Positions 17,812-62,752 of a DNA stretch of 64,000 nucleotides are shown in pieces. Numbering within the stretch: position 1 is the stretch's first letter; each line of letters opens with the position of its first letter. The position numbers were made by a program, and so were the translations under genes. Below the pieces are notes generated by a model that worked only from the letters and a program-made list of their open reading frames with translations, made no database searches and was not told the origin of the DNA. Source of the stretch: Octopus bimaculoides (Eukaryota); assembly GCF_001194135.2 (NCBI RefSeq), contig NC_068983.1, positions 94,760,659-94,824,658 of the forward strand. The letters run 5' to 3'.

Positions 17812-17834
17812 CACAATTAAGAATTCTCTAATTA

Positions 17835-24110: not shown

Positions 24111-24945
24111 GTTTAACGTCCGCTTTCCATGCTAGCATGGGTTGGACGATTTGACTGAGGACTGGTGAAACCGGATGGCAACACCAGGCTCCAGTCTGAT
24201 TTGGCAGAGTTTCTACAGCTGGATGCCCTTCCTAACGCCAACCACTCAGAGAGTGTAGTGGGTGCTTTTACGTGTCACCCGCACGAAAACGGCCACGCTC
24301 GAAATGGTGTCTTTTATGTGCCACCCGNNNNNNNNNNNNNNNNNNNNNNNNNNNNNNNNNNNNNNNNNNNNNNNNNNNNNNNNNNNNNNNNNNNNNNNNN
24401 NNNNNNNNNNNNNNNNNNNNNNNNNNNNNNNNNNNNNNNNNNNNNNNNNNNNNNNNNNNNNNNNNNNNNNNNNNNNNNNNNNNNNNNNNNNNNNNNNNNN
24501 NNNNNNNNNNNNNNNNNNNNNNNNNNNNNNNNNNNNNNNNNNNNNNNNNNNNNNNNNNNNNNNNNNNNNNNNNNNNNNNNNNNNNNNNNNNNNNNNNNNN
24601 NNNNNNNNNNNNNNNNNNNNNNNNNNNNNNNNCAGGTCTTCCTGGGCCTACCTCTTCCACGGGTTCCCTCAACTGTTAGGGTGTGGCACTTTTTCACGCA
24701 GCTATCCTCCTCCATTCTCACCACATGTCCATACCAGCGCAATCGTCTCTCTTGCACGCCACAACTGATGCTTCTAATGTTCAGCTTTTCTCTCAAGATA
24801 CTTACACTCTGACGGGTATTCACATTGACATTACACATCCAACGGAGCATACTGGCTTCATTCCTTGCGAGCTTACGTATGTCCTCAGCAGTTACAGCCC
24901 ATGTTTCACTGCCATGTAGCATGGTTGTTCGTACGCATGCGTCAT
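24073..24945 (-). mobile_element. RTE-clade LINE 3' end with (GAT)n tail, gap inside
   Basis: MLHGSETWAVT..RNEASMLRWMC..RRLRWYGHVVRM..GRGRPRKT; the 3' tail is shared with short copies at 22660-22790 and 39130-39290. Confidence 0.88.
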
Positions 24946-33372: not shown

Positions 33373-36300
33373 TATATACGACGGGCTTCTTTCAGTTTCT
33401 GTCTACCAAATCCACTCACAAGGCTTTGGTCGGCCTGAGGCTATAGTAGAAGACACTTGCCCAAGGTGCCACGCAGTGGGAATGAACCTGGACCATGTGG
33501 TTGGTAAGCAAGCTACTTACCACACAGCCACTCCTTCTGCCTATTAATAAAAAAGAAACAAGGTTTGAGTAAAACATGTTGTGGAAGTAACATTATACAT
33601 ATGTTTTTGAATTAAAGTTCTTTTCTGTTATATGTGTAGTGTGGAAGAAAAATGTTGCAGGGATAAAAATAAAATAAATCAATGCAGGTGAGCTGAGGGA
33701 AAAACTTATCAAAGTTTGTTGTTTCATTTTGCTAAAATGAGTCCCATGTTGAGACACATTTTAAATAAACAAACAAGAATAAAAAGACTTTGCACTCTTC
33801 CAGAGTAAGCTGACAACTGTTCAGGCTGCATTCTGCCAAGGAAAGGTTTTCAGTTCCACTTTATTTAGCAAATGTCTGACTGAGAGTTACTACTCTCTGA
33901 TTGGTCAAAAAGAAAAAAACATTAGATAGCAAAGTTTCAAAATTGCATCTGTTTGCATGAGGTTTGCTTCACATTATTTTTAAGGTGTCAGAAAGTAGCT
34001 AGGTATGCTGGCAAATAAATGTGACTTGATATATCAGATCTACACATACTCAACCATCATTCTAAGGACTCTCATTAGGTTAAATTTAGTTTTTTTATAG
34101 CTTCACTTATTTCTTTTTACAAAGATTTGGACTTCAAATAATGGCAGTATTTGTACAGTTCTCAACCATGTTTTTAGTTTTTGATCATATCAGTATAAGC
34201 TGAAAGAACAATGATGATGATATTAACGATGTCAGTGACACCTGTATTTTAGTGAGTTTACTTCGTTCATCTCATTGTCCCTAGGAGCTGTCTTTGAGTC
34301 CAGTAACAATCCCCTTGCTTCTAAAATTTTGGGTAAGTCAAACTTTAATTAGCCTTCTTCAAACTCATGGTGATTCATATCATCACAAATTTCAAGGAAT
34401 TTTTAGTCCGGTAGATGTTGTTACTTCATTTAATATTTATTATTTGTTTTAGCTAGCTGCCTGGCTTCACTTTTACTGTTTGGCTGCAGATTGCAGCCAA
34501 TTTAAATATACAAGTTACTGATTAATTGAAGCTACTTTATTTGACTTAGCCACTACTGGACTGTACAGTCAGCTAAACATAACATAGTATGAACAGTGAA
34601 CCATAGGATGTATGAGCATTAATAGAGCAATGTAAATATTTGTGGAGAGCTGATAATTGCTGAGCTCACTAAATAATTTTAATATTATTATTAGCATTTA
34701 AAGACATGAACTTTGTCACAATGAGATGTTAGACCTGCCAGAAATGGCAACCCAAATGTCTCTCATATTATAACCTAACATCTTAAAAAATGAAGTTTAT
34801 ATTGGGCATTGTAGTTTTATATATATGTATATGAAAAAGATGGCTGATCCTGAACAAAATGTCTCCCATCATATAGGTCTGCTGGGTCAATGTAGCTCTC
34901 TGACTAAAACAACATCAAACCTAATATTTCTTTCAGATTTATTCTCCATGATTTTATTGCTTCCTACATAATTCTTTTTTTATGAACAGTCATTTGTTTG
35001 AAACCATTTATTTCTCCATTTTTGTATTCTTATCCAATCAAGCACTGAGGTACACTATGTGCCTTTTCTCTTAGTGATAACTGATTCTAATTTTGGCCAT
35101 TTTCCCCACTTTTTATCAAGTCAGATCTCCTCATTTAATTTGTTATAAATTCCTATCTTCATTGCGTCAATATTACATTTATAACATTTGATAATCTTGT
35201 TGTGATGTCTGTCATTGCAATGTGACTGTTATGATGTGTGCAATTACAATGTGAGTGTTGATAATAGTTCTGTAATGTGACAGTTGATAAAAGTGCTGTT
35301 TGTCATTGCAATATGCCCTTGCATATTATATTGGTTATCTTTTATGTTAGTTTAAAGATGAGGGGAATACCCATGAATTTGTTAATCTCCCCTTGTTTGT
35401 GAAATTGTGATGACAATAGGTCACTTCAGATTATGTAAACTGTTAAGATTAAAATTGGTGTCTTTGAAAGTTTCAAAAAGTTGAAGTTGTAAGATAGGTA
35501 GCATTAAGTATAGGGTCTTGCACATGAGACACAGTAATGATTACGAAAAAAAAAAAAGAAACAAACATTGATTAGATTTAAATGAGCAGTATAGAATTAG
35601 CAATTTAAGCATGTTGAGACTTTTGTTGCCTTAAGAGAAGATACAACTTAATAATGGCTCAGTGATTGAAGGTTGCTTGTTAGTGTGAGTTTTTTTTTTT
35701 TCAGGCAGTAGTTTTTCCTAGGACCAAGGAAATATAGCGAGAACATTATCCTAAGATGCAATTCATCGTAGGGCATAGTAATGTTATTTTCTACATCTAT
35801 TTCAGCCATACTTTGGTACACCTAATACTGCTTTCTTATAATATACATTATATGGCTTTATTTAATAAAATATTATGGCTTCAATCCAGTTAGCAGTACA
35901 ATAATTGAGTCAGAGGATGCCTTGCTTTTAATAATTTGCACCAATGCTTAAATAATGCCTGCATTGTACAGTTTCAAGTCCTTTCATTTCTATTTATTCA
36001 GATGAAGATAAAGAAAATGCCAGAAAAGTTAAAATTACCAAAGAGCTTTCTAAAACATTGAAAGCTTTACAAGCCTCACAAATGTTTGATGAACCAGTAC
36101 AAAGGTCAGTAAATAATTCAATTTTTTTCACAAAGCCTTCATTCGGTTTATGTTAACCCTTGGTCTACTAGAGAAAATGTATGTCACTAATTACCAGCTG
36201 GGTCCAATGGACCCAAATTTTTTCTTTTATTCAAACTACCACTATTTCTTAGCTACATTATATATGCTATCAGGTGAATGAAGAATTACTGTTTCTAACA

Positions 36301-39600: not shown

Positions 39601-41087
39601 TATCTGTTAAAAAACAAAAACAAAAACAAAACATTTATAATCTTTTGAATTAAGCTTAACAGTTGTATCCTAAGTTCTTGGTAGCACATCATAAGTATTA
39701 GACTGCAGTTTCAGATTTGTCAATCCTTATTAGAGTTGCTGCTCTGATACCAAAAGAAAATCAGTTCAAAGATAATATTACTTAGTTTATACATGAGCAA
39801 ATAAATTTCAGTTTTGATATTGGTTTAAACAACTGTTAAAAAAAAAAAAGAATTACCAAGACAGTACATATATAAAAATAAATTAAGTATACTGGAGGGT
39901 ATTTATGATTGAAAATATATGTATTGTAGTGTGTTCTCTGATAAAGATTAGTGAATCTGAATCTGTAGTCATTTTGAAATCCCTCACATGTCTCCAAGAA
40001 TTTAGGGTATATTTCCAACTTTCAATTCATAGCAAACTCATGTTTTAAACAATTAAACAAATATATTGAATGTTTTAACCACTGTTCAGTTTTGGTGAAT
40101 TAGTAATTTCTATAGTTTGTATATCACAACCAGTTTTTATATGAATGACTGTTCTACAAATTTTTCCTTTTCATATTTTGTTTCTTGTTTTGAAGTAATG
40201 AACTATCCAACCGACTTTGTGACATTCTTGAAGCTATATTCCTTCATGGACTTAAGGAACCAGTTACGCATAAGGTAAAATAACCATTTATTATTATTAT
40301 TATTACTGAGTGAGAGAGCAGTGCATGTCATCAAAGTGACATTGGAGTACAAATATACAAAGCCCAATATATCCATCATGACTACCCATCTGATAAAGGT
40401 ACACCAGGCACATGCATCACAACCACATGTGTGCGACATCGTGGTCTCATATCAAGGTAAACAATGCATGACCTTGCAGGTGGGGCCCAGTTAAAATTTT
40501 CTTCAGGTTGAGTAGCCCATCCCACTCAAAAGGTCCCTGAGTAAGGTTTGTTTAAGGATGATGAACGAAACACCCATGTTTCCAGAGGTGAATTATTCAA
40601 ACCCCAAAGAATTCCTTTCGACTTCCCAACACATGGCTATGATGCTCTCCCACTACTTCTGCTTGTGATCAGAGATGCACATATCATCAACCACCAAGGG
40701 ACATGCTCAACTGGTTATGGTCAAGCAACTGACAAGCAAATCTGTAGTATTGAGCAGAATATTAGCCCATCTTTTATACCAAGATAAAACATGTACATGA
40801 TAGCACTTCTAATCAGTTCAGATCAAAAACCATGAGAACCACTGCCTGATACTGCATTTTATTATTATTATTTAAGCCAGCAAGCTGGCAGAATCATTAG
40901 CATGCTGGATGAAATGCTTAGCGGTATTTCACATGTCACTACGATCTGAGTTCAAATTCCACCGAGATTGACTTTCCCTTTCATCCTTTCGGGGTTGATA
41001 AAATAAGTACCAGTTGAATACTGGGGTCGATATAATTGACTTATCCCCTCCCTCAGAAAGCTGCCCTTATGGAAAAATTTGAAGGCA

Positions 41088-41130
<43 letters not shown>

Positions 41131-44091
41131 GATATTTTTGTTGAAACACCCCGTTTTGCAAGGGGTGTGCATCAATAATTTTAAAATTTTAACTACTTTT
41201 GGCAAAGCAAATATTTTACAATTTTCTGTAATTATTTAAAGATTGCTGATAAAGAAGCCATCATAATGTTTGACAAAAAACCATGCTCCTTGTCGGAAAA
41301 AATTGAGAATAAGAATATCAAATAGCCTAAACTTAATGATGTCACTGAGGTGAATAATGTTTCATTTCTAAGCCATATCAAAACTTTCAGTGTTGACAAT
41401 GCGAACAATAACAGCAACAGTGACAACAACAATGATACTTAAGAAATGAAACATAAAAACGCAGTTATCACCTCCACTTCTTTTGCATTTGTGGCAGGAA
41501 ATATGAAAAGTTTCCACATAGATAAAGAAGAATTAAAATTGGCAAGAAAAATTGTAAAGAGATGGGATAAGGGTAGCTCGAAACCTTCCATCTGACGTGA
41601 TAGAAAATATCGCAAGATGCTCAGTAACGTATCGTTGCATTGAAGTCAAGTCTCAGTGGGTGGGAAATGCTACTGAAAGCAAAATACAGTTAAGCATAAA
41701 ATATAAATATTGTATCAGGATTGAATATTTTATATTTAAGAAATGTTTCAACCCTTCTAAACACCCAGTTCCCTCTTGACATTTGTCATGCTCTTATGAG
41801 TTTATAACACCAACAATGGGGTGATACCACCCAGGTTAAGAGCCACTAATGCAGAGGATCTCTTTTTGTTCAAATTACAGAAATTGTAAAAATGTGTCCT
41901 TATTTAAGTATCTCTTAATATATTTCCAGCTAAAGATGTTTATGCAACCAACTTCAGGACAAGTTACAACCCTTGTAAGTATACCTCAGTTTTATTGTTT
42001 TATTAGTGATTAAAATCCCAGTAAGTTGACCAAAATGGTTGGGCATCTTACTAAATACATTTTACTATTTAGTTTTTACTTCTGTATTCTAACTTCTGAA
42101 TTTGTTGGAATCAGTCACCTGGGGGAAAAGTGTGTCATATATTCAAAACCCATTCCATCATTTCCCCCTCCTTACAATTACTTTGTAATTATTGTATGAA
42201 ATGCCAAAAGAAATCCAATACTTGTTATTGAAACAACTTATCTAACTCATGAACATAAACATGCATATTCAAAGTTAACAGCCTCCTTTCTATCAGTGGC
42301 TGACTAGCTCTGTTAACTTCAGGAAGATAGAAAGTTGGTGCTGTAATTTTTATGCCATTTACTAACAGGCTGGTACTGAAAGAAAAGTGAAATAGCTACT
42401 TTGAAAAATTCAAAGCAGGAAAGCAAAAATTTCATATGTTAGAACATCAATACATAAAAACTTGTAAAATTCAGTTTTCTATTCCTCATTTTTTTATGTA
42501 TAATTAGTCAGAAGTAGAGGGCAATAACTAAGATGTTTGCTGGCTCTATCAAGCTGGTAAGTTTGGGTTGCTTTCAACAGATTGAACTTTGCTAAAGGCT
42601 TCCAAAGAGAAAAAATAGTATTAACTCTCTAACATTCAGATTACTCTATCTGATAAAATTCTTATTTATTCACATTGTTTTGAATCAATCATGCATTATC
42701 TTGTAGCTTCAACATTTCAATGATGTGATTGTTTATTTTCAAATGATATTGTAGGATAGCTGTGAGAGGTGGGACTTGGCCATTTTAAACATAAAACAGG
42801 TAGAATATTGAGCCAGATATGTCCAATTTAAATGCTAAAGTGTTAAACTAGATAGCATATAGGGTCCAAACTTTTCTCACTCTGTAAAAGGAAACTTTTT
42901 AATGGAAAATAAGCACTATCATTTGAATAAAACTGCAAAACATTTTTTGCTTCAACTCTGAAGTGATAAAATTAATTATCATACTAAAGTGCCTTCTTTT
43001 ATGGAAAAAAAAAAGAACCGTTCTCTTACCATACACTTTTGTAACATCTGATCAATGTTGCCTGGCTACTCTGTACAGTTACATGCAGATATCATCATAG
43101 GCCAAATACTAAATTATATTTTTTTTATTATATATAATATTGATTTTGTATATTTCCACGATATAAGTAAGTCCAGTCTAAGCCAAAAACTGACAAGTGG
43201 TTTGCTTGGATTGCATGATAATCATTTTATGCATTGGGACAAAGCCACAATGAACACATATCTGGTATTTACATACTGCTAGCTTCTTTTTGGAAAGTGA
43301 AATGAAAGAGATGATATGCAATAGCTACATGAAACTATTATCATCAATCAGATACTTAAAAACATCTCAAATAACTGTTATTATGTTATTTTGATATTAT
43401 AAATAGATGTTATTCATTTCTTACTTCTATAATATTTATTCTTTCTTCTATACTTATCCTTTTGAAACAGAACTTCTGGAAGTTTATCAGCCGATTTACT
43501 CACAAAAATGTTATTGCTCAAATTCAAGATTTAAATCAGATAAAAACTGATGTTGGCTATTGTCGGGTAAGTATGTGTAGATTTCAGTCGTATGTGATTA
43601 TGTGAACATGCAGATATGTGGATATCATCCAAACACAATGACTGAAGTACAAGGCATCAGTTTTATTTCAATTTAAAAAAAAACTCATCAGATGTGTACT
43701 GAAGTTTGTAACAGTATGGAATATTGTATAACAAGCTGAAGTATTGTCGCATAACAAACTGAGTTGTTGGAGTATAACAGACTGGAGTGCTGCTTCCTAA
43801 CAAACTGGATTGCTGTTTTATAATAAATGAAGTATTTTTGTGAAACACTTGAGTTATATAATTAACTAACTATGTCTTTAAAATTACATAAGTTTGTTAA
43901 AGAATGATATATATATATATATATATATATTACAAATTAAAAGGGTAAAGGTTTATCAATTTATTAATTTATTAATAAATCAACAATTAATAATTTTTAC
44001 CAAGCCCTTCGGTATGTAAGCACCATTATCGGTGGAGAACTTATTTAAAAGTTCATATATATTTATAAACATAATTAAGGGNNNNNNNNNN

Positions 44092-44133
<42 letters not shown>

Positions 44134-47100
44134 TAACAATGCATCCTGGCATTGCCTGGGTGTTATGACCTACAGCCACATTGTATTATTTGTTCCTTTC
44201 TTATGGACAGAATTGGCACAACTGATATATAGTGAGCTGGATTACTAGCATAATGGAAGTTATTGTTAGTTTAAAAGTGAAGTGGGGAGGATACAATTTG
44301 CATGGATTTGCATGAAAGTGCTTCCTGTTCTTAAGAAGTATCTCAAACTATGTATTGTTTCATTGTATATTTTGCCCAGAAATTACATTTTCAAAATTTT
44401 AATTTCCCCGTCCCCACCGCAATTTCTTAATTTGTAACTTTTCTCAATTTTTTTTTCATCCATGTAGAATAGAAATTATGAATTTGGTAAATATATATTT
44501 TTTTTAAAGTTGAATTTTTCTTAAAGAAACACTCAGTACCCCTTCCCCCATCTCACCCACCCATCACCTACCTGCTTTCAAAAGCTAAAACCTCCCAATG
44601 TTTCATGCATGTGTAAAATTGTACTGAAATAGCAGATGTAAAACATACCAGACACCCACCAGAAAACCCAACATGCTAGAAACAACAGGTAAATGACATT
44701 ACTTCAGAAAAAACTTCCCCGCTTTCCAAAAAGCTAAAAGTGAAACATTAGGAGTTTGTAGCTTTTTGAAAGTGGTGAGGTGATGGGTGGATGTTTGGGA
44801 AGGAGATTTTAATGTTTCTTTAAGAAAAAAGGAAAAAGAAAATTCTTAACGATTCATACTCTCTGTTTTTTTCTCTGTGGATTACCAATAAAAAATTTGG
44901 GAAAAAGTAAAAATGAAGGAATTGGGGTGTGGAAGGAGAAAATTAAAATATTGTAAACATCGAAAACATAGGAATCGGAAGAAATTTAGGCAAAAAATAA
45001 GGCAGGGGGCACAAATGTCACCTTGGACATGCTAGAAACAACAGGTAGAGGACAGGATTTCTAGGAAAACCTCCTTTTAAGTTTATATTGAAGATCAGGT
45101 TTTTAAATATGCTCATCATAAACACAAATTACAGAATAGAAAAAAGATCATTTCAATTAGATTTGAGCTGTAATTTTGCGCATGCACACAGCAAGAAATA
45201 ACAATTCGTACAGAAGTTTTACCTAGAGTGTGCATGTGTGTGCCAAAGGAAGTTATATTATGCCATTCTTTCATTTGAAGTAGTAAAGTTTTCAACTCAA
45301 TCATGTGGTTGATCATATGGGATCATATGATTGTTCGTTAATTTCCATAAAAAGAGAGGAAAGTGAAAGATGTATGGATGTACGTGCATGAGAGAGAGTG
45401 AGTGAGTGAAGGTACGTGTTGTCATATATGTATTTTTTTGCATGTATGTGTAAGTGGAACTGTCTCTCTCTCTCTCTCTCTCTCATATACACATATATAA
45501 ATTACATGGAAAAATGCGAGCAAGAGAAATGATAGTCTTAAGATTATAGACCTGGAAAAGTACAGGACAAGTTATTACACTTGAAAAAGTTCAGGGCAAC
45601 TTATTACATCTGGTATAGTACAGAACAAGAAAATTTTTACTTAAAATATTGTAGCACCAAACAGCTGTCAGTGGATATACTCTCCTTTGTGGCGGTCAGT
45701 GCTGTGTCTAACATGACCCATTGTCAGAAGTTTTGACACCTCCTTCAGGTTTGTTGTCCTGCGTCACTCATAAAGTGAATTTAGAGGAGCTGTGGTTGTT
45801 CATTTGTGGATAACAGGGAAACAATGAGGTGATAGACTTGCTCTTGAACTTTGAACGTTGGCATAAATCCATGTTCAACTGTCTCCTTTAGATGCACCAA
45901 ACAATGTCATTTGAAATGCAGAGTTGTATTGTCCGATATTGTTCAGAAAATCCTTTGACTGGATGGAAGTGCCTTCCAGAAGATCCATAAGAGGTTAAGG
46001 AGGAGCTGGTAGTTTTGGCAATCTTACCCTACCACCTGAGCAACACATGCCATTAGTTTCATTTGGAAATTTTAAAGCTTTGCAGAAATGACAATTTGAG
46101 TTTAACACACCAATTTGGACAAAATTATCATTTTTATAAGAATGGGATGGATCATATCTGAAAGCAGTTCCAGGAATTGTGAAGAACGAATTTGTACATA
46201 GTTTGTTTCTGAGAGCTGTTCTATTGGACCTCTGTCTAATCATTAAAATGTAGTTTTAATGATTCAGCATTAAGTGCTGCAGCATGCTTTTGCTGATCTT
46301 GGGATCAGACCCCATTTGATGCGCTGCAGTGCTCATTTTCTGGTCTTGAGAAAGTCTTATTATACTTCTGTCTTGAGACTCTATTTGACGTGCTGCAGCA
46401 TGCATTTGCTGATCTTGGGGAAAGTTTCATCTCCCTTCTGTGTTGAGACTCCATCTGACATGCTGCAGCATGCCTTTGATCATAAGAAAGTCTCATGTTG
46501 CTTATGTCTTGAGACTCCATTGGATGTGCTGCAGCATGCATTTGCTGATTTTGGGAAAGTCTCATCTCCTCTCTGTATTGAGACTCCATCTGACGTGCTG
46601 CAGTATACCTTTGCTGATCTTGTGAAAGTCTCATCTCGCTTCTCTCTTGAGACTCCGTTTTACATGTTACAGCATGCCTTTGCTGATCTTGAGAAAGTCT
46701 CATCTTGCTTCTGTCTTAAGATTTCATTTGATGTGTTGCAGCATGTAGTTTGCTGATCTTGGGAAAGTCTCATAAATATAATAGAAATAAGATGGTTTTA
46801 GTGTTATCAGATTAGAATTAAAAGTAAAAGAATAAAAGTGAAACTTATATCACATTACAATATAGATCTTATTCTTTCACTTTTGACACGTAATACTGAA
46901 CCAGTGCCAATGTTATATTGTTTTAATTCAAATGAAAAAACTCACTTGTTGACACTCACAGGGTCTGATACTATTACCTTGTAAAATTTGATTTGATTGA
47001 GCCATTTGAGAATGCATAGGGAACAGACAGACAGAGAGACAAAGAATTATATATAGAGAGATAGTAAGCAGCCTTCTTTATTATAGTACAGATGTGACTA

Positions 47101-50100
47101 ATTTGGAGAAACATTACTTTCATTATTAACACATCGTCACTCTTATAATGCCACACTTTGTAATTTTGGTTCAAATTGAAAGTGTGAAACTATTTTCACT
47201 TTCTAATGAAACCTGGTCATTGTAGAGCTTTGTCTTTCAAATAACTAAAGCTGGTTGTTGAGATAATGTAGAAAATATGTAGGTGAAAATAAAGTTTATT
47301 TGGTAGCCGAAAGATTACTGAACCTTTTCATATCCCATACGTCAAAATTGGCAACTCAGTTTTCGAATGCATAAGGAACATATGCACACACACACACACA
47401 CACATACAAACTCTCTTTTATATATATAGATTATAAGGGAGAGAAAGACACACGAGCATAGCTTTGTGGATAAGACATTTGCTTCCCAACTATATGGTTT
47501 TGGGTTCAGTACCATGTGTAGTACACTGGGCAAGTGTCTTCCATTATAGCTTTAGGCTGACCAAAGCTTTGTAAGTGAATTTGGTAGACAGAAACTAAAA
47601 GAAACTAGTTGTATACACACACACACATCTATATATTTGATATGTATATATGTATGCGTGTATGTGTGGGCAGATCTTTGAGTGTCTCTCTGCTTTGACA
47701 TCACATGTGAGTTGTAAACAAGCATTACTGTTGTGAAGGTGGTGTCCTTCACACCCAATCTTCCATTAAAACTTGGCTGGCCATGGGAAATAAATCCCAC
47801 TTGAAAACAGCTGAGAGTTACTAACAAGAAGAGCATCCAGCTGTAGAAAATCTACCTCAATGAATTCTGTCCTGTCTGTCCCATGCAAGTATGGAAAAGT
47901 GTATACTAAAACATGATACACACACACACATGTGTATATAAATGAGATGACAAAGAAATAAATGATTATCTTATGAACTTCATTAGCTTATAAGATGCAG
48001 TGGACTCATTGTTGGGTGCCCGAGTGACACTTTCTAGCTTCATTCATATATGTACATTGTAAATAAACTCAGCACAGAGTGAGTTGGTATTCTACAGAAA
48101 ATAAAGGAATTCTCAAACACAGGATAGCCTTGAATTAGTAAGAGGAAATATGTACAAAAATATACCTTTAAATGTATATAATTAACATTTTCAGTAGTTG
48201 TTCCTTGTTTGTATCCTTTAACATTTTAATGGCAATAAGAGCCAGTAGTGCTTATTAAAACCCATCTCTCATTGTATCTGAACAAACCCATGAGTCACTT
48301 AACCTCTCACCTGACATCCAGTTCTTGATTTTTTTTTCTACAGTTTATAACTGTCATTCAGCTAACTGAAGCAGGTGTAGTGAAGTATTGAAATATTCTG
48401 CTCAAAGCTTGAGTGCAGTGTTTGGGACAGGAAACAGAATCATGACCCTTGTCCTGAGAGATTAACACAATACTTCTTCAACTATTCCAACACTCTATTG
48501 AATGTTTAATTTTTTTTGAAGTTTGATAATATATATTTGTCTGCTATAATTTATCTATAACAAAATTGTCTCTATCACTCTTTGTAGGTTTGGATAAGAC
48601 TTGCCCTGAATGATGGTATCCTTGGCAGCTACATTGATGTTATGACTGCAGATGTCCAGGCTCTAGAGTGAGAAATATTTTTATTTCCAAGTCTGTTGAA
48701 AATTTCTGTATCAGAAAGTGGATACATAGCAAATGAGGGGTGTGAAATACCTTAACTGATAATTTGAGAAAAGCAGTTAGTTTTTTATTTATTTATTTAT
48801 TACACTGTGTGACCCCCAAATAAAATGAAATGAAGGGCTGAAAGGATATTAAAGCATAAGCATTTAAACTGGCCATATCCAGCCAAAATATTCTACCTGT
48901 TTTATATTCAAACTGGCCATATCCAGGCTCTCACATCTATCATTTTAAAAATTAACAGTTACCTCATCAAAATCTCAAACCTTCATGATAATGCATGATT
49001 AATTCAAAACAATGTGAATAAGTAAACATTACTTTTAACAGAATGGTGAATGCTAAAGGGTTAATTAATAGATGTCAGAAATGAGGGACAAATAAGTGAA
49101 ACCAAAGACCTAGTCTTCAGTGATACAGCAGTGTTGATAATGATGATAATAATAGGCAGAATTTCTCTTATTTTATGCTTTATATCATCATCGTCGTCAT
49201 CCTCACCCACTTGCATAGATTAGATGGGTTTGTCAAAGAGTATCAAGACATCATTAATCATTTTATCACTGATATTATCAAATATGCTTTTTTCTTTTGT
49301 CCAGAATTTATATCATCTATACTTATACATATATCGCATTCTCTTACTCTCTCTCTCTCTCTCTCTGTATATATATATATATATATAGTAAAGAGTTTAT
49401 TTTGCAAAATAATGTGGCAGTCCTGACTAGGACTATGTTACAACATTTCTTTTTTTTTTTTTGCCACATTACTGANNNNNNNNNNNNNNNNNNNNNNNNN
49501 NNNNNNNNNNNNNNNNNNNNNNNNNNNNNNNNNNNNNNNNNNNNNNNNNNNNNNNNNNNNNNNNNNNNNNNNNNNNNNNNNNNNNNNNNNNNNNNNNNNN
49601 NNNNNNNNNNNNNNNNNNNNNNNNNNNNNNNNNNNNNNNNNNNNNNNNNNNNNNNNNNNNNNNNNNNNTATTTGCCAAAGGAAGTTATCCTTCCCATCTT
49701 GATCTACGATACGTACGTACTCGAGTTTCAGGGTTATTTCCCTTCTTCAGCGTACGACAATCGCCGACCTTCGATGCAAAAGATATCCCTTGGCAAATAT
49801 ATATAAGTTTTTCCAGTGAAATTATTCACTGATATATATATCTATTCCCCCTCCCCCTCTTTTTTTTTTTCCTGAAATAAGTTAATCAGGGAAGTAGAGC
49901 AGTGCTCAGGACTTTTTCAAGATTGACTGGGTCAATGACTGTACAGAAAAAAATGTGGGAGGAGAGGTGACTTCGAGGGGTTGATATCATATTCTGGGAA
50001 GAAAGAATTATAATAGGGAGAGGGATTTGTGTCAGGCACAGTAGAGGTGATGAAGACAGAAAAGTTGGGTGGGAGTACATGGAAGTAGTATGAAGCTAAC

Positions 50101-50631
50101 AAGTTCAGAAGGGCAAAGACCATTGTAGTAGCAATAGAATAGACAGAGAGGAGCCAATATATCTGTGCTAGGTATTGTAATGTGTTATTGTGGAAAGAAG
50201 TGGTGCCATGAAAGTATATGTTATTGTTTCACCCAGGAAGAATTGGGGCATGGCTGGTTTCTTACGGCATTCTTTCAGGGTTTTGATTGGTATCTGAATC
50301 CTTGCATCATCTTCATATGATCTTTTCTGCAGAGGCCTGGCAAAAGATATTGGGTTTATATTTTGTCCTTGTTTATAACTTCGCTACATTTGATGACATG
50401 TTTACGAAAGTTGTCTATTCTTCTTGGGAGAGAGAAAGAGTTTATTATGCTCCACCATTATATTTTCTTAAAACAATCCAGTATATTTTAATCTGTGCTT
50501 TAATCTTGTTTTCTTTTTTTTAAAGTTCATTTTATCACCATCTATCATATTTACGAGATTTGGAGCAACCTGGGATTTTGAAATCATATGTTCAAGGTAA
50601 ATTTCCTGAGGAGTTTTTCCCCCCGTTTGGT

Positions 50632-50922: not shown

Positions 50923-53900
50923 GACACACATACACACACACACACACACTCTCAGAGTAATGAAAAAGTTAGTAGAAGAATATTGACTACAGGCATAAGT
51001 ATTTCACTAGATTCTCCTTTTTCAAACAGTTGCAGTGATGAATTCTTACCTTCCTCTATTACAGCAATAATAGGAAACATTCTTACAATTTAATGCATTA
51101 GTACAAATTAGATCTCATCCTCAAATGCTACAGATAATTTGTAAAAGACGTATGTGTAAGTGAACAGTTTTTGCTTTTGAAGATACTGTGATTATTATTC
51201 CCAATTTTTGGTAATTAGTGGAAATAATTGGTGTGCCAACTGAATCATTTCCCTTCGTTGTCACTTTTAATGTCAGTTCACTGTTGTGCAAAGCATACAT
51301 TGACCCACATGTTATGCATTTTATCAGGAGATAGGCTTTCAATATAGGATTTAATTTCCATTAATATAAAACAAAATATCTTAAAATATCCCATAAGTTC
51401 AGTGAAAACAATTTTAAAGTATTTTCTGATAAAGAGAGTAACACATGAAAACAAATTCTATAATTCCATCTACATTCACTAATGGAAAGGTTTTAATGAT
51501 TTGGAGTTTTGAACCAGTTTTAGCATAATTACTTGTCTTTCTTGTTAGTTTCTCTCATTTGTCAGGCATTTATTAAATTCAGTGCATAAATAAGTCCTAC
51601 AGATCAGTGACACTCACAAGAGCCATTTGACCTATGTTACAGAATTGCCTAATCACCTACATATTAACATGCAGTATTAAGAGAATAAACCAAATACATG
51701 GCAGACATCAATTTTAATTCTTCACAATAATTTACATATGTTATTGTTTTTTGTTTTTTTCTTATTGTAAATTTGGTTTCCAACAGTGATAGTTTTAGAA
51801 TATTATATAGAGTAGTCACATATACAATAATACAGTTCCAACTTTGATCAAATAAAAAAGTTAAATGTATTTTGGGTTATTTATAGCATTTGTTTTTACT
51901 GCAGGTATAACAGCTTTCCAGTTTGAACTTCCTTACAATTCAAGTGTTTTGAACAGTTGGATGAACATACCTCTATTACTTGCTGGAGTTGATGGGGTAG
52001 CTGGTTTAAATGATGGCATCAGTATTGAAGAGATTGGAAATGCCCGACCTCCACCCGTAACAGTTACTCCTGGAAGAGTGGTAGAATCTGTTGATGTTTC
52101 TGTAGCAACATCACCTAGTAAAGATCTTCCAAACGAAGAAGATCTTGTTGTTATTAAAAAGCTTCCTCCAGATCCCAAAACAGACGACAAACCATCGACT
52201 AGTAATACTGTTGAAGGTAAATGATGTTGTCCTTCTCTTTCTCTCTAAGATATTTCATACTTGTCACAATTTCCTTTTAGAACATACTTTTACTAATTTC
52301 TCTGTTGCTGTGGTGTTTTGCATTTTAATCAGAGGAGGAGAGACAGTGGGCTCTATATGGTAAGCATTCAACTTGATGATTGTTGATAAATTTAAAGAAA
52401 ATGTGATGAGGGAGTACCACTAGGCTACATTTCTTGGGGGCTAATTGCAAACTACTTTCAAGTTCTTGGAGGCAAATCGCTAATTTCAAGTTTTGTGGAT
52501 GAAGCAGAGCTAATATTACAGAATACATATATGGAATTGACAATGCCTTGGGAAGACTTCATGGAGTGGGTACATAAAAGAAGTACCTAAAATATGAGGG
52601 TCTTTGAGAGTTATGTGAGACACATGGAAGCAGTTTACAATTCTTCCAGTGGAAGTGGGATATTGTGAATTTGTATCCACATCTAAAATATCTTACTTGG
52701 CTGACATTGGACTTAAATAACTGAGTAGTGATTCCTGCACTGTTTGTGTAATTAAAGAATGCTTCATCATGGCTGTAGCAGATGAATGTGAAAAAGAGAC
52801 CAAAGCTGAGAATAAGGTACAAAATCTTAAGGGGATAGAAACAAAATAATTGTTGAGTAACAACTGTCTTTGATTTGGTAAGATGACTGCATAAAGAACA
52901 AGATGAAAACACCTTGTTACAACAAGGACAATCCCTGTTAGCATCAATGCTGCTTGGCACTGGAGTGATCTCTAGTTGACATCTTCTAAAACCCCAGAGT
53001 GCAGGCTGTGTATAAAATGATATTTGTAAATATAAAGAAATACCAGTTTACGTGTGTGTATGTATGCAAAGAATTAGATTCCAAGGAAACTAGTGGTTGC
53101 CTACCTAAGTATAATCAGTTAATAAAAGTTTACAAAGCTCAATAGGTTCTGCAAACTCTGTGTGTGTGCACTTGCATGCATATATACATAAGAATCAAGC
53201 TTTGATTTGAAATTACTTTCATTTCTATTCTTAACATCTTTATGATAGTGCCAACTATATTTGTTGATAATTCTGTTAATTTACTTTCAGAGTTATGTTT
53301 GTTATCCTATCGAGATAAAGGAGGTAGCAAAAAGAGTTAAGCATCAGATTATGCTTACGGAGACCTTCAAAACATTTTTTTTTTGTGTGTGTGCTTAACA
53401 TTTACCCATAAAAATTGCAACAATTTTCCTCAGGTTCCTCTGCTTCACAGATCCTAGTTTGACAATTTGGTGTTCAGAATAGAAATTTAGCTGAGTATAT
53501 ATCTCATCTTCCATCCGTTGAAAGAATAATCTGTTTCCTCAAATTTAGTCATTATTAGTCACTGTTTCATTATATTAAGCTTTTCTACTCAGCACAATTT
53601 TACATTAGTGTTTTTTCATGTTTGTCAAGATACACAAAAAGTGAATAAACATTAATTTTCCTTTTCTTTTTTTTTTTCTTTCTTGATTAACAGTCAAGAC
53701 TGTTTTAAAGAAAAACATTAAAGAGAAATCAAATTCCGTATCTGACCCTGTAAATAATCCTTCACAGACCACAGATGACCTCTCACACAAATCAGACAAA
53801 GATGTACGTGATAATACTAAAGACAGTGATACATCAATATCATCAGACAATAATGTTCCACAGCAGACAGATTTAAACCCTTCTCATAATTCTATTCCTC

Positions 53901-54101
53901 AACCACAAAACAAACCCATGTCTGCTCATCAGAAAATTAATCAACGACCAAAGACCCTAGAGCTGTCTAACTCACCTTGTAATCATAGTCTGAATTTAGG
54001 CAACAGCTTAGAGGTTGCTTCAGGCTGGTCATCACATTTCCGTGAAGAAATGAATCCAGAAGTAATGACTGAACCTGCTGAAATAGTTGAAGTTCAAGAT
54101 G
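30508..54101 (+). CDS. PLEKHM1: Pleckstrin homology domain-containing family M member 1 homolog, 5' part: join(30508-30526,36002-36104,40196-40274,41930-41974,43471-43566,48588-48667,50526-50596,51905-52216,53694-54101,...); 3' exons lie beyond the window
   Basis: The GT-AG chain is phase-consistent. The RUN domain reads LCDILEAIFLHGL...FWKFISRFTHK...KTDVGYCRVWIRLALNDG...YLRDLE...QGITAFQFELPYNSSVLNSW, paralleling human PLEKHM1 as recalled (MCSALEAVFIHGL / TDVGRCRAWLRLALNDG / [20 protein letters not shown]). Confidence 0.9.
32600..32830 (-). mobile_element. Gypsy-type gag N-terminal remnant
   Basis: AIKLKLPTYWSND resembles the KLP.FW..DP gag motif; no LTR seen. Confidence 0.4.
33100..33530 (-). 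mobile_element. tRNA-derived SINE, same family as 20165-20555
   Basis: Reverse complement of the 20165 copy along its length. Confidence 0.8.
34285..34332 (+). CDS. PLEKHM1: Candidate 48-nt cassette exon of PLEKHM1 (GAVFESSNNPLASKIL)
   Basis: Acceptor ctcattgtccctAG; donor GG|GTAAGT; phase 1-1; open in the gene frame. Confidence 0.5.
36002..36104 (+). CDS. PLEKHM1: PLEKHM1 exon (DEDKENARKVKITKELSKTLKALQASQMFDEPVQ-S)
   Basis: Acceptor tttattcAG; donor GTCAGT; KALQ motif at the start of the RUN domain. Confidence 0.88.
36434..36794 (+). mobile_element. tRNA-headed, hammerhead-bearing short element, copy B, nested in the piggyBac
   Basis: 12-bp direct flanks ATGAATATTACA (36422-36433 and 36795-36806); inverted 3' copy at 36434-36549; A box TAGCATAGTGG; B box GTTCGATTCC; (AAT)n; hammerhead core. 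Confidence 0.82.
36706..36751 (+). ncRNA. Minimal type I hammerhead ribozyme motif
   Basis: Stem I GACAC/GUGUU; CUGAUGA-A; stem II GGCUG/CAGCC; GAAA; palindromic stem III (AACGUU); predicted cleavage after GUU at 36746. Confidence 0.7.
40196..40274 (+). CDS. PLEKHM1: PLEKHM1 exon (SNELSNRLCDILEAIFLHGLKEPVTHK)
   Basis: RUN motif LC..LEAIF.HGL; acceptor ttttgaAG; donor GTAAAA. Confidence 0.92.
40287..40855 (-). mobile_element. (TAA)n-tailed retro-repeat starting 12 nt after a PLEKHM1 exon
   Basis: Second copy in opposite orientation at 62955-63452, flanked there by TAA runs. Confidence 0.7.
40880..41090 (+). mobile_element. tRNA-derived SINE (MetaSINE-like core)
   Basis: GAGTTCAAATTCC and TTTCATCCTTTCGGGGTTGATAAAATAAGTACCAG. 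Confidence 0.65.
41930..41974 (+). CDS. PLEKHM1: PLEKHM1 45-nt exon (LKMFMQPTSGQVTTL)
   Basis: Acceptor tttccAG; donor GTAAGT; phase 0-0; fills the HGL-to-FW loop. Confidence 0.75.
42518..42556 (+). CDS. PLEKHM1: Candidate 39-nt cassette exon of PLEKHM1 (RAITKMFAGSIKL)
   Basis: Strong donor CTG|GTAAGT; open only from the most distal AG of the tandem CAGAAGTAG; phase 0-0. Confidence 0.35.
42625..42842. mobile_element. Decayed piggyBac-type MITE
   Basis: TTAA on both sides with degenerate CCCTTTAGCATT-type ends; a related end is at about 49050. Confidence 0.5.
43471..43566 (+). CDS. PLEKHM1: PLEKHM1 exon (NFWKFISRFTHKNVIAQIQDLNQIKTDVGYCR)
   Basis: RUN motifs FW and TDVG.CR; acceptor aaacAG; donor GTAAGT. 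Confidence 0.94.
44133..47430 (-). mobile_element. Internally deleted Helitron with RepHel N-terminal remnant
   Basis: Minus-strand A|TCTATA 5' end at 47430; 3' hairpin CCCAGGCAATGCCAGG then TTAG|T at 44133; CHFCKALKFPNE..CCSGGRVRLP and FLNNIGQYNSAFQMT..FMPTFKVQ..VYH motifs. Confidence 0.82.
46275..46772 (-). repeat. About seven 66-70 bp (mostly 69 bp, 23 aa) coding repeats in the Helitron N-terminus
   Basis: (C/T)TGCAGCA-type anchors at 46393, 46463, 46529, 46598, 46667 and 46736; EMRLSQDQQRH-like units. Confidence 0.85.
48588..48667 (+). CDS. PLEKHM1: PLEKHM1 exon (VWIRLALNDGILGSYIDVMTADVQAL-D)
   Basis: RUN motif W.RLALNDG; acceptor tttgtAG; donor GTGAGA. Confidence 0.94.
50526..50596 (+). 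CDS. PLEKHM1: PLEKHM1 exon (DSFYHHLSYLRDLEQPGILKSYVQ-G)
   Basis: RUN motif FY...LRD.E; poly-T tract plus aaAG; donor GTAAAT; phase 2 to 1. Confidence 0.92.
51905..52216 (+). CDS. PLEKHM1: PLEKHM1 exon (GITAFQFELPYNSSVLNSWMNIPLLLAGV...STSNTVE)
   Basis: End of the RUN domain plus linker; acceptor ctgcAG; donor GTAAAT; lies within track ORF 51865-52224. Confidence 0.92.
52333..52359 (+). CDS. PLEKHM1: Candidate 27-nt microexon of PLEKHM1 (EEERQWALY)
   Basis: Branch point TACTAAT at 52291-52297; UGC motifs at 52306 and 52319; acceptor ttttaatcAG; donor G|GTAAGC; phase 1-1; in frame. Confidence 0.6.
53694..54101 (+). CDS. PLEKHM1: PLEKHM1 linker exon (VKTVLKKNIKEKSNS...EIVEVQD-)
   Basis: Long pyrimidine tract plus aacAG; 408 nt open in frame; donor G|GTAAGT at 54102. 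Confidence 0.85.
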
Positions 54102-56504
54102 GTAAGTCAGCAGTTTTGTCATTTTGCTCCAACTTCATTTCTGTTCTGCTATTCCTACACTTCTGATATCAAACAACTACTACTAATAAACAGCTTTTTA
54201 ATACCACAAACATTTGCATGAAAAGCTCTTTTGTCTTCATTAAAGAACATCAGTGATATCTCGATATCAGATTATAATCTTGATCCAGTTTTGCTTCCTC
54301 ATCATTTCATTTAACCTGTCTTTGCTGCTGCTTCCTTGAGATAGAGAGATCTTGTTATTTACTAACTAGACACTGTATCAACTATATAAAGATGTGGCAA
54401 TGTTTTTTATAATAATCAAATGAAATCAACTTTACCTTCCATTCTTTTGGGGTTAACAAAGTACCAATCCAGAATGATGGGTTAGCATAATTATTAGAAC
54501 ACTAGCTTAAAAGCCACCCTATCGGGTGACTTTTCAGCTGGCTCCTGTAGAGTGTTCAACAATGATACTTCATGCATTGAGTACATGTTAAATTTTATTA
54601 AACTTGACCAATATTTTTCAAGTAATGAACAATTTTCATAAAAATAATGATNNNNNNNNNNNAATGATATCATTTGTCAACTTGGAACTTATTGCAAAGC
54701 TGCATGATAAACATTTTTTTGTCTTCCCATTCGGGGGGGTCAGTACAATTTTTTTTCTATCTAACCTCTTTCTTTCTCTCTCTCTCTCTTTCTGTTGATT
54801 ATTTTAAACCGTCACTAGTACCACCAGTATCACCACCACAACTGCCATACATACACCATTCAGACTTCAACGTCACCACCATCAATACCTTTGACTTTGC
54901 CGCCTTCCCCACCACCACCATCACCACTGTCTTTCACATCATTTACTATCACCGTTGTCCCTGACCGCCTTGGCTACCACCACCACCATCACTGTTGCCT
55001 CCGTCTCTATCACAACTACAGCCCATACTACCACCCCATTACCATCACAACCATCAATCTACTACCACCCTCACCATCTCTATGCCTACTATTACTCTCA
55101 CTCCAGCAGGAGGAATAGTAGATGTGTCATTGAATAGTGAGAGAGGGGGTCAAAGTGTGATACACTGACACACAAATTTGTTTTGGCATTTATTATTATA
55201 GATTACATGAGATTTCTTGTAGTATATCTTCTGGCTCTTTGCATTCTGTTGGCAGTGACAATATGACACTGATGCCTAGGTGTATCAGCCTTTACCTTTC
55301 ACTTGGACAACATTAGTGTCATGGGGAGAGGAGGCTTAGATGCTTGGGCAACTGCTGGTTTTTCATAAAATCTTTGTCCAAACCTACATCTAAGAGAAGA
55401 ACTTTCCAGGTGCAGACATTGCCTCATGAGACATTCAGAAGCCCTAGAATACTATTCTTACTATAATATATATAACTGAAGCTTACTTCAGCCTTAGATA
55501 TCTTAGAGAGACATCACATTCTTCTTTAAAGATGTTCTGAGCTTCAATGTCTTTTATAGAATAGTCAGAGGTGGAGTGGTAGGACTTTTTAAACATTGCA
55601 GACACTCCAGGACTAGTGAGATTGACATAGTTATGTTCAGTTTGTAGGAAAAATGCTGTCACAAAGGATTACTATTGTGAGGAGGGGAAGATTAAGCAAA
55701 ATATTAGGATATATAGTAACATACAGTAAGTAGGATATACAGGCCATTGTAGATGCAGTCAAAATAGACATGATAAAGAAAAAAGCAGCGTTTCTGTGAG
55801 CTAGAATGTTTGTTTGTTGGCGATTGAATCTTTCTCAATTTGTTTGCAATTGAATCTTTTCCAATCAGAGATGCAGTCTAGAAAATTTGTGTGTAAAGTA
55901 GTAGCACTATTCCATAGATGTGAGCAATACTCTAATGTCAGATTTGTGGAGTTCAGCAACTGATTAGGGTTGAAGTGATATTTTCATCTTTGTGATGCAG
56001 TTTTGACAGTGACATTGTAAGATCTTGCACATGTAGCATCTTTTGAATTAATAAAAATTAATGAAAAATTGCAACTGCACAGAGACTTTTGATATTGGTA
56101 ATGAATCAAATATACACTGAACTGAGAAAAGGCACCAGCTTCAACAATGGACATGACAGGAGTAACTATAATGATACTTAACTGAAGTAAAATTCTCGCA
56201 ATGTAATTTCTTAATGAGGTTGCCTAAAGAGGAAAGTATATGATTAGAGATTGCTGGTATCTTTCGATTTGTAAAGATTGCAGTTAGATCATTGGGTAGG
56301 ACTTAATAGCTTATGTTGCTGATGAAAAGATGGTTGGTTGAAGAAGCTGATTCAGCATAGGCAGTTCAGTAGTTGCAAAAAGATGCAATAGTTGAGACAT
56401 TCAGTGTAATTGTCAACATTGATTAAAAATAGAGGTGGTAGTGCAACTCGCAACATTTAAACTTTCATTTTCTGCAGTTTTATATTTATATTTCCATGTT
56501 TACA

Positions 56505-62219: not shown

Positions 62220-62752
62220 TTTTGAAGAGAAATTTGATACTTTGCAGAAAGGACAACCACAAACCTGAAGGCATCGTCGAAAATAGAAATGCAAAGATCC
62301 TATGGGATTTTATGATTCAGTGGGACCATGAGATAGAGAATAGGAAGCCAGACATAGTCTTAATTGAGAAAGAAGACAAACTATGCTGGATCATAGATAT
62401 AGCATGCCCAGCTGACAACAAGGTATGCGATAAGGAAGAAAGAAAAGTTGAGAGATATGACAGGTTAGCTTGGGAAGTTAAGCAGTTGTGGTTGATGAGA
62501 AAGGTAGCAGTAGTACCAATAATTGTCGGAGCCCTGGGAACAGTGAGCAAAAATCTTGAGAAGTATATGGAACAAATAAGGGTGGAGTGCTTGCAGAAAA
62601 CAGCACTGCTTGGAACTGTTCAAATACTCCAGAAGGTGCTTGAAAAATAAAGGGTGTTACCTTAGTTCACTGGTAGTGAACAGCTGACACCGTAGTACAT
62701 CTCCAGCGTTAGCAGTTGTGCAAAGGCAATGATAATAATAATAATAATAATA
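62220..62752 (+). mobile_element. R4/Dong-clade non-LTR retrotransposon 3' end (restriction-like endonuclease)
   Basis: ILWDF.IQ.DHEIENRKPDIVLI..IIDIACP.D..KE..K..Y..L..GALG..LQKTALLGT; the 3'UTR ends in (TAA)n. Confidence 0.88.

What the first reader, a model, noticed from the sequence alone, without database searches (positions are those of the whole stretch)
52291..52365. Candidate neural microexon (27 nt) in PLEKHM1 with an SRRM3/4-eMIC signature
Seen: branch point TACTAAT 36 nt upstream; a U-rich tract with UGC at 52306 and 52319; ttttaatcAG; 27 nt; G|GTAAGC donor; phase 1-1; in frame (adds EEERQWALY to the post-RUN linker); only 116 nt after the previous exon. Known: neural microexons of 3-27 nt controlled by eMIC-domain proteins are marked by upstream UGC motifs and occur across bilaterians. 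Neuron-specific remodelling of this lysosome/autophagy adaptor in a cephalopod is inference.
Basis: partly seen in the sequence, partly recalled or inferred. Interest (0 to 1): 0.7.

Follow-up and report, generated by a model that had tools for sequence, protein, structure and literature searches.

The report
Unconfirmed 27-nt microexon candidate, octopod gene
A 27-base stretch inside an intron of a cephalopod lysosome-adaptor-type gene carries the complete sequence signature of a neuron-specific "microexon". It is absent from the nearest available relative (Argonauta) and no RNA evidence could be obtained, so it remains a roughly even-odds candidate.

Summary
The flanking exons are real. The orthologous protein of the octopod Argonauta hians (73% identical over 391 aa) joins exon F directly to exon G, and its only gap against the window protein there is the 9 residues EEERQWALY.

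The region upstream of the candidate meets all four published eMIC-exon 3' features: a CUAAY branch point, a long AG-exclusion zone, a UCUC tract, and UGC close to the AG. Only 8 of 20,171 AG dinucleotides in 333 kb of cephalopod DNA meet all four. Only the candidate is also followed, at a frame-preserving 3-27 nt, by a strong donor (about 0.02 expected per 128 kb).

Three points count against it:
- Neither Argonauta copy has any homologue in the orthologous intron, although the gene's genuine 45-nt exon is found easily there (z 13.7-16.9).
- The only orthologue seen is the skipping form.
- No transcript data were reachable.

The "PLEKHM1" label is approximate. The RUN domain is PLEKHM1-type, but the orthologue is RUN + Rubicon-homology domain with no PH domain.

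My estimates: real exon about 0.58, neural eMIC-regulated exon about 0.45, chance look-alike about 0.40.

The parts
51905..52216 (+). Upstream constitutive exon F (312 nt): the end of the RUN domain plus the first ~90 aa of the linker. Donor AAG|GTAAAT, ends in phase 1.
   Evidence: RUN domain confirmed. 98% aa match to Argonauta exon at L002 50130-50444.
52217..52332 (+). 116-nt upstream intron carrying the whole 3' splice-site code of the candidate.
   Evidence: The first ~35 nt (CT-rich tract ending in taag) resemble the start of the Argonauta intron. The rest has no counterpart there.
52291..52297 (+). Branch-point consensus TACTAAT (CUAAY class). Branch A at 52296, 35 nt before the AG.
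   Evidence: None of the 7 constitutive acceptors tested in this gene has CTRAY within 70 nt.
52299..52303 (+). UCUCU pyrimidine motif between the branch point and the UGCs.
52306..52308 (+). First UGC motif.
52319..52321 (+). Second UGC motif, 12 nt before the AG. This is the position class reported for SRRM4-responsive UGCs.
52281..52330 (+). AG-exclusion zone (50 nt without AG). The AG at 52331-52332 is the first AG after the branch point.
52333..52359 (+). Candidate cassette microexon, 27 nt, phase 1-1, encodes EEERQWALY. Purine-rich (70%), GC 52%.
   Evidence: No homologue in Argonauta.
52360..52365 (+). Donor GTAAGC (exon end ATG|). Generic PWM score 9.24 bits, against 5.4-11.4 for this gene's real donors.
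53694..54101 (+). Downstream constitutive exon G (408 nt), linker. Acceptor ttgattaacag|TC, donor ATG|GTAAGT.
   Evidence: 97% aa match to L002 52979-53410.
36002..36104 (+). Exon A of the same gene (N-terminal region before RUN).
40196..40274 (+). Exon B (start of RUN).
41930..41974 (+). Exon B2, a genuine 45-nt exon (LKMFMQPTSGQVTTL). Used as the positive control for cross-species detection.
43471..43566 (+). Exon C (RUN).
48588..48667 (+). Exon D (RUN).
50526..50596 (+). Exon E (RUN).

Best explanation
The 27 nt at 52333-52359 are a genuine but evolutionarily young cassette microexon, restricted to the octopus lineage, in a RUN-RH endolysosomal adaptor gene.

By default the exon is skipped, because its 3' splice site is weak next to the AG and the branch point lies 35 nt away. 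This step is inferred.

Where the eMIC-containing isoform of Srrm234 is expressed, expected to be neurons, that protein engages the UCUCU...UGC...UGC element between the branch point and the AG. It stabilises SF1/U2AF/U2 assembly there. The short 116-nt upstream intron allows recognition by intron definition, and the strong G|GTAAG donor recruits U1. This step is inferred from the fly and mammalian mechanism.

Inclusion inserts EEERQWALY, an acidic run followed by aromatic and hydrophobic residues, at a locally conserved point of the disordered linker about 90 aa after the RUN domain. This presumably changes a short binding motif.

Shown: the sequence anatomy, its rarity, and the flanking junctions. 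Inferred: that it is spliced at all, the tissue, the regulator, and the protein-level effect.
For: [quoted passage not shown]
- The exon is in frame, 27 nt, and open.
- The donor is as strong as the gene's real donors.
- The upstream intron is short, as for fly eMIC exons.
- The full code is found at 5 of 7,178 AGs in the window and 8 of 20,171 in window plus Argonauta locus.
- The chance of a donor of at least 9.24 bits at a frame-preserving 3-27 nt is 0.0043 per AG. That gives about 0.02 expected per 128 kb and about 0.0015 in this gene's sense introns with an open frame.
- Simulations agree.
- The candidate differs from the 7 constitutive acceptors tested, none of which has CTRAY within 70 nt.
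- The exon body is GC- and purine-rich, as 0.66% of intronic 27-mers are.
- It is not part of a repeat in the window or in the Argonauta loci.
- The Argonauta protein is labelled 'isoform X2', which hints that the protein the name was transferred from has other isoforms. This is a weak inference.
Against: - No transcript or protein containing EEERQWALY was found. The only close orthologue is the skipping form.
- There is no homologue of the exon or its upstream code in the orthologous intron of either Argonauta hians copy (z -0.9 and -0.7), nor anywhere in the gene (z -1.1). The genuine 45-nt exon gives z 13.7 and 16.9, and its central 27 nt alone gives z 7.6.
- By splice-site scores alone about 39 sites in the window do as well.
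- Thresholds and some features (composition, proximity) were chosen after seeing the candidate.
- Genome-wide, tens of equally good look-alikes are expected in roughly 1 Gb of sense intron. This is my extrapolation.
- The fly-specific features (strong downstream branch point, unusually strong upstream donor) are not seen.
Confidence: 0.45

Rival explanations
1. Chance pseudo-exon. An intronic stretch happens to combine a branch-point consensus, a U/G-rich tract with two UGC, an AG and a GTAAG 27 nt later. It is never or only negligibly spliced in, and the intron 52217-53693 is removed as one piece.
For: - The exon is not conserved in Argonauta, while a real small exon of the same gene is.
- The orthologous protein skips it.
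- Splice-site scores alone are unremarkable.
- Other frame-preserving look-alikes exist in the same gene: 42554-42556, and 55110-55136, which is open in phase 1.
- Genome-wide, the expected number of such look-alikes is of the same order as the number of real microexons that would pass the same filter (my extrapolation).
Against: The joint signature is expected about 0.02 times per 128 kb, and about 0.0015 times in this gene's sense introns with an open frame. It is the only site of its kind in 333 kb. The features that make it rare are the ones the literature defined independently for eMIC exons.
Confidence: 0.4
2. A real exon that is not neuron-specific or eMIC-dependent. It would be either constitutive in this species, gained after the split from Argonauta, or a broadly or otherwise regulated alternative exon recognised through its strong branch point, strong donor, purine-rich body and short upstream intron.
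For: The core signals (TACTAAT, G|GTAAG, GGAGGAGAGA purine run, 116-nt intron) could suffice for intron-definition splicing without a tissue-specific factor. UGC is neither strictly necessary nor sufficient for SRRM4 response.
Against: The polypyrimidine tract next to the AG is clearly weaker than in the gene's constitutive exons: PWM 4.47 against 4.97-10.38, with 6 of 7 at 7.8 or above. That fits a regulated exon rather than a constitutive one. The upstream architecture is described as largely unique to eMIC regulation.
Confidence: 0.13

Closest known systems
SRRM3/SRRM4 (nSR100)-dependent neural microexons of vertebrates
   Same: Length of 27 nt or less and frame-preserving. Strong 5' splice site. 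Branch point and Py tract displaced from the AG. Bipartite UCUCUC...UGC intronic enhancer with UGC between branch point and AG. Host gene in membrane trafficking.
   Different: Vertebrate microexons and their flanks are typically highly conserved, whereas this one has no counterpart in another octopod. No inclusion or SRRM dependence is shown here.
eMIC (Srrm234)-dependent exons of Drosophila (PMC8797185)
   Same: Long AG-exclusion zone, UGC near the 3'ss, UCUC motifs, strong CUAAY branch point, weak 3'ss region, short flanking intron and an intron-definition regime.
   Different: Fly eMIC exons have weak 5'ss, strong upstream 5'ss and an unusually strong downstream branch point. Here the donor is strong, the upstream donor is average, and no CTRAY precedes exon G.
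Intronic pseudo-exons (decoy splice-site pairs)
   Same: Located in an intron, with no cross-species conservation and no transcript support. Plain splice-site scores are matched by dozens of other sites in the window.
   Different: Decoys do not normally combine the complete regulator-specific code, an open frame-preserving length and a purine-rich body.
PLEKHM1 / Rubicon family of RUN- and RH-domain endolysosomal adaptors
   Same: The RUN domain is closest to human PLEKHM1 RUN (PDB 8jc5, E 3.4e-33, against PLEKHM2 at 8.4e-13). The orthologue has a C-terminal Rubicon-homology domain (PF13901, 6.4e-69).
   Different: No PH domain in the Argonauta orthologue or in the 5 nearest mollusc-type homologues. 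More distant ~1050-aa homologues do have PH. RUN + RH is the domain set of Rubicon, and the best solved match to the RH domain is Rubicon 6wcw.

Membership tests
eMIC/SRRM3-4-dependent neural microexon | Exon of 3-27 nt that preserves the reading frame | tested here: met
   27 nt, phase 1-1, no stop, adds EEERQWALY. 60% of random intronic 27-mers are also open in this phase.
eMIC/SRRM3-4-dependent neural microexon | UGC motif between branch point and AG, close to the 3' splice site | tested here: met
   TGC at 52306 and 52319, the latter 12 nt before the AG. Present in 74-79% of human SRRM3/4 microexons.
eMIC/SRRM3-4-dependent neural microexon | UCUC-type pyrimidine motif upstream of the UGC | tested here: met
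   UCUCU at 52299-52303.
eMIC/SRRM3-4-dependent neural microexon | Strong branch-point sequence (CUAAY) placed far from the AG, with a long AG-exclusion zone | tested here: met
   TACTAAT, branch A 35 nt before the AG, 50 nt without AG. Absent from the 7 constitutive acceptors tested.
eMIC/SRRM3-4-dependent neural microexon | Weak polypyrimidine/3'ss context next to the AG, with a strong 5'ss (mammalian pattern) | tested here: met
   Generic PWM acceptor 4.47 bits against 4.97-10.38 for real exons. Donor 9.24 against 5.4-11.4. The PWM values are approximations from general knowledge, used for ranking only.
eMIC/SRRM3-4-dependent neural microexon | Inclusion in neurons and skipping elsewhere | not testable with these tools
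   No RNA-seq access. No protein with the insert was found. The only orthologue is the skipping form.
eMIC/SRRM3-4-dependent neural microexon | Inclusion depends on the eMIC domain of Srrm234/SRRM3/4 | not testable with these tools
   Needs a minigene or knock-down experiment.
eMIC/SRRM3-4-dependent neural microexon | Conservation of the exon and flanking intron in related species (typical, not strictly defining) | tested here: not met
   No homologue in either Argonauta hians copy (z -0.9 and -0.7). The control 45-nt exon gives z 13.7 and 16.9.
PLEKHM1 | N-terminal RUN domain of the PLEKHM1 type | tested here: met
   Pfam RUN 1.4e-24. Best solved match is PLEKHM1 RUN 8jc5, 3.4e-33.
PLEKHM1 | Pleckstrin-homology domains between RUN and the C-terminal domain | tested here: not met
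   The Argonauta orthologue (733 aa) has RUN + RH_dom only, with about 105 aa of low-complexity sequence between exon G and the RH domain. The 5 nearest homologues also lack PH, while distant ~1050-aa homologues have PH. That part of the gene lies outside the window.
PLEKHM1 | C-terminal Rubicon-homology (C1-like zinc) domain | tested here: met
   PF13901 6.4e-69 in the orthologue. Outside the window.
Rubicon (RUBCN) | RUN + RH architecture without PH, with Rubicon-type RUN sequence | tested here: inconclusive
   The architecture matches, and the RH domain's best solved hit is Rubicon 6wcw at 5.5e-47. No Rubicon RUN or PLEKHM1 RH sequence appeared among the solved-structure matches for a fair comparison, and the RUN is clearly PLEKHM1-like.

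The most novel reading that the evidence does not exclude
An eMIC-responsive neural microexon was born de novo in the octopus lineage after its split from argonauts, in a RUN-RH endolysosomal/autophagy adaptor. It inserts an acidic-aromatic motif (EEERQWALY) at a conserved point of the linker and so rewires partner binding specifically in neurons. This would be a dated example of how the full cis-code for Srrm234 control assembles from intronic sequence next to a CT-rich tract that also begins the Argonauta intron.
Probability: 0.3. Interest if true: 0.5.

Novelty: new member of a known kind. Interest (0 to 1): 0.33.

Why it matters
If real, this would add a cephalopod, lineage-specific member to the bilaterian eMIC microexon programme, in a gene class that controls lysosome and autophagosome traffic. 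It comes with a clear before-and-after comparison (octopus against Argonauta) for studying how such exons arise.

If it is a look-alike, it is a useful warning. A textbook-complete cis-signature, rare at the scale of one window, still has only about even predictive value at genome scale without RNA evidence.

Either way, hundreds of such exons are known, and one more candidate is of modest interest.

Tried and rejected
1. Word-indexed protein search with the inclusion isoform gave no hits. The same search with the RUN region gave only Elysia and two unnamed sequences. This tool later proved to have missed the Argonauta orthologue, which is in the collection, so its negative results are weak.
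I used Elysia P0001 instead, which found the Argonauta protein.
3. Single-exon Pfam scans were uninformative.
4. Literature: no paper mentions PLEKHM1 together with microexons. The 2026 preprint that includes Octopus bimaculoides tissue-specific exons has no supplementary tables held.
5. A metagenome scan for the exon F peptide found nothing.
6. An exact look-up of the genomic ORF spanning exon F found nothing on record.
7. Repeat or transposon origin of the F-G intron: no other copy in the window or in the Argonauta loci.
8. Alternative readings rejected:
   - Retention of the 116-nt intron gives an immediate TGA stop.
   - The upstream AG at 52279-80 would leave a 63-nt intron and a 79-nt frame-shifting exon.
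   - Recursive splicing is unlikely in a 1.5-kb intron.
9. Motif readings of the peptide are from my own knowledge, not tested. It is not a canonical LIR (W-x-x-Y), not a kinesin W-acidic motif, and not a YxxPhi motif.

Full report
**Observation**

The sequence is as described.
- TACTAAT lies at 52291-52297, with the branch A at 52296.
- UCUCU lies at 52299-52303.
- TGC lies at 52306-52308 and 52319-52321.
- The first AG after the branch point is at 52331-52332, which leaves a 50-nt AG-free zone.
- The 27-nt body is AGGAGGAGAGACAGTGGGCTCTATATG at 52333-52359, followed by the donor G|GTAAGC.
- The upstream exon ends at 52216 (AAG|GTAAAT), so the upstream intron is 116 nt. The downstream exon begins at 53694.
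- The phase is 1-1, and inclusion inserts exactly EEERQWALY.

**Gene and organism**

I rebuilt the gene in the window from open frames and splice sites. The exons are:

| Exon | Coordinates |
|---|---|
| A | 36002-36104 |
| B | 40196-40274 |
| B2 | 41930-41974 |
| C | 43471-43566 |
| D | 48588-48667 |
| E | 50526-50596 |
| F | 51905-52216 |
| G | 53694-54101 |

The spliced product has a Pfam RUN domain (1.4e-24). Its best solved relative is the human PLEKHM1 RUN domain (8jc5, 3.4e-33, against 8.4e-13 for PLEKHM2).

The word-indexed protein searches found no close relative. An exhaustive HMMER search seeded with the Elysia hit returned P0142. P0142 is 73% identical to the window protein over all 391 residues, including the fast-evolving linker. 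It is GAB1611016.1 of Argonauta hians, an incirrate octopod, named 'sorting nexin-29-like isoform X2'. The window therefore comes from a cephalopod, most likely another octopod.

P0142 has RUN + Rubicon-homology domain and no PH domain. So do the five nearest homologues I scanned. More distant ~1050-aa homologues do carry PH. The best solved match to its RH domain is Rubicon. 'PLEKHM1' is thus right for the RUN domain but not for the architecture. 'PLEKHM1-like RUN-RH adaptor' is safer.

**The orthologue and the junctions**

P0142 reads ...STSSVE|VKNILKK... where the window gives ...SNTVE[EEERQWALY]VKTVLKK... At this junction the alignment gap is exactly the nine residues of the candidate. This confirms the exon F to exon G junction and shows that the skipping form is the one on record. 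It gives no evidence for inclusion.

**Conservation**

I fetched both Argonauta loci (L002 and L003) and mapped their exons.
- Blastn across the F-G interval matches only the ends of the flanking exons and the tract before exon G.
- Local alignment of the candidate with 40-nt flanks against the orthologous intron scores below shuffled queries. In L002 z is -0.9, with 180 of 200 shuffles as good. In L003 z is -0.7. Against the whole L002 gene z is -1.1.
- The same test finds the genuine 45-nt exon B2 with z 13.7 and 16.9, and its central 27 nt alone with z 7.6, in a four-fold larger search space.
- No other phase-1, open, splice-flanked microexon resembling the candidate exists in the Argonauta intron.

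If the candidate is an exon, it arose after the split from argonauts or was lost there. According to a 2026 preprint, only a minority of neural tissue-specific exons of insects are shared with another species. Non-conservation therefore weakens the case but does not kill it.

**Chance**

The position-weight matrices are generic approximations from my own knowledge and were used only for ranking. With them:
- The acceptor scores 4.47 bits, against 4.97-10.38 for the gene's real acceptors.
- The donor scores 9.24 bits, against 5.4-11.4 for the real donors.
- By the sum of the two scores the candidate ranks 14th of 5,956 AG..GT pairs of 3-27 nt on the + strand, and 25 pairs on the - strand do as well.

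Splice sites alone therefore prove nothing.

The upstream code is different. PMC8797185 lists long AG-exclusion zones, UGC close to the 3'ss, UCUC-rich tracts and strong CUAAY branch points as shared by fly and mammalian eMIC exons and 'largely unique' to them. bioRxiv 10.1101/2024.09.17.613571 gives the UCUCUC...UGC enhancer, UGC between branch point and AG in 74-79% of human targets, a long BP-AG distance and a strong 5'ss. The candidate meets all of these.
- In real sequence only 5 of 7,178 AGs in the window, and 8 of 20,171 in the window plus L002, have the full code.
- The chance that an AG is followed at a frame-preserving 3-27 nt by a donor of at least 9.24 bits is 0.0043.
- The product is about 0.02 per 128 kb, or about 0.0015 for this gene's sense introns with an open frame. 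The open fraction is 0.60.
- Third-order Markov simulations give 0.02 per 64-kb strand with at least one UGC and 0.003 with two.
- Even with relaxed thresholds, only one other site in 333 kb passes: a 3-nt one on the opposite strand.
- None of the seven constitutive acceptors tested has CTRAY within 70 nt.
- The exon body is unusually GC- and purine-rich, matched by 0.66% of intronic 27-mers.
- The intron is not a repeat.

Two caveats apply. Several thresholds were set at the candidate's own values. Extrapolated to roughly 1 Gb of sense intron, tens of such look-alikes are expected genome-wide, which is the same order as the real microexons likely to pass so strict a filter. Both the intron total and the extrapolation are my own estimates.

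**Mechanism and weighing**

If spliced, the exon would be skipped by default. The eMIC isoform of Srrm234 would rescue it by acting at the UCUCU-UGC-UGC element, helped by intron definition across the 116-nt intron and by the strong donor. All of this is inferred by analogy with fly and mammalian exons.

Combining the rarity of the signature, the base rate of microexons per gene, the non-conservation and the missing RNA evidence, I put the probabilities at:

| Reading | Probability |
|---|---|
| Used exon of any kind | about 0.58 |
| Neural, eMIC-type exon | about 0.45 |
| Real exon under other regulation | about 0.13 |
| Never-used look-alike | about 0.40 |

The plausible range for 'real exon' is wide, about 0.3 to 0.8, because the likelihood ratios are soft.

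**Comparison, novelty and verdict**

The candidate works like a vertebrate SRRM4 microexon or a fly eMIC exon. Membership cannot be granted, because inclusion, tissue and regulator are untested. It would be a new member of a known kind, and one candidate among hundreds of known exons is of modest interest. A junction-read search in existing octopus brain RNA-seq would settle it quickly.

Noticed in passing
window 41930-41974 (+): A genuine 45-nt exon (LKMFMQPTSGQVTTL, ttccag|...|gtaagt) of the same gene. I first missed it and recovered it from the Argonauta protein. The exon and its immediate flanks are conserved in both Argonauta copies (z 13.7 and 16.9).
   Followed up: yes
window ~10171-10455 (+): An exon encoding ...[34 protein letters not shown]. 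It matches PRKR-interacting protein 1 (PF06658) of many molluscs at 88-97% identity over about 34 aa, so a PRKRIP1 gene probably lies upstream on the same strand.
   Followed up: partly
window 62222-62650 (+): A 142-aa ORF 73% identical to unnamed ENA proteins of 471-513 aa. Some more distant relatives carry a reverse-transcriptase domain. It is probably a retrotransposon remnant in the intron after exon G.
   Followed up: partly
window 17690-18984 (+): Three consecutive long open frames (150, 81 and 171 aa) that look retroelement-derived. The last resembles a GIY-YIG-type nuclease by eye only. No database hit could be assigned to it in the chimeric query, whose table does not say which part of the query each hit matched.
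   Followed up: no
window 26001-28000: A block with GC 0.52 and GC skew +0.49 in a window that otherwise has GC 0.24-0.38. It lies between the assembly gaps 24328-24632 and 28308-29104. Its nature was not examined.
   Followed up: no
window 42554-42556, 55110-55136 (+); 46033-46035 (-): Other frame-preserving AG..GT look-alikes. On the + strand there is a 3-nt CTG with donor 10.79 bits, and a 27-nt segment open in phase 1 in the intron after exon G. On the - strand there is a 3-nt site with CTAAY and UGC. None has the full eMIC code together with a strong donor.
   Followed up: partly
L002 and L003 (Argonauta hians BAAFZT010000152.1 and BAAFZT010000184.1): The Argonauta assembly carries two copies of the gene on different contigs. 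Their exons are about 96-100% identical at the protein level, but the F-G introns differ in length (2.55 kb against 1.9 kb). They are either haplotigs or a recent duplication. Both introns begin with a (CT)n tract that corresponds to the CT-rich start of the window's intron.
   Followed up: partly
tool behaviour (against 44, 48): The word-indexed protein search did not return the Argonauta orthologue, although the two proteins share exact stretches of more than 40 residues and the orthologue is in the collection. No cephalopod appeared among the PRKRIP1 hits either. 'No hit' from that tool should not be read as absence.
   Followed up: yes
window, 9 runs of N (e.g. 3063-3478, 5743-6218, 28308-29104, 49476-49668): Scaffold gaps totalling 2,261 N. 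One (49476-49668) lies in the intron between exons D and E. None lies near the candidate.
   Followed up: yes
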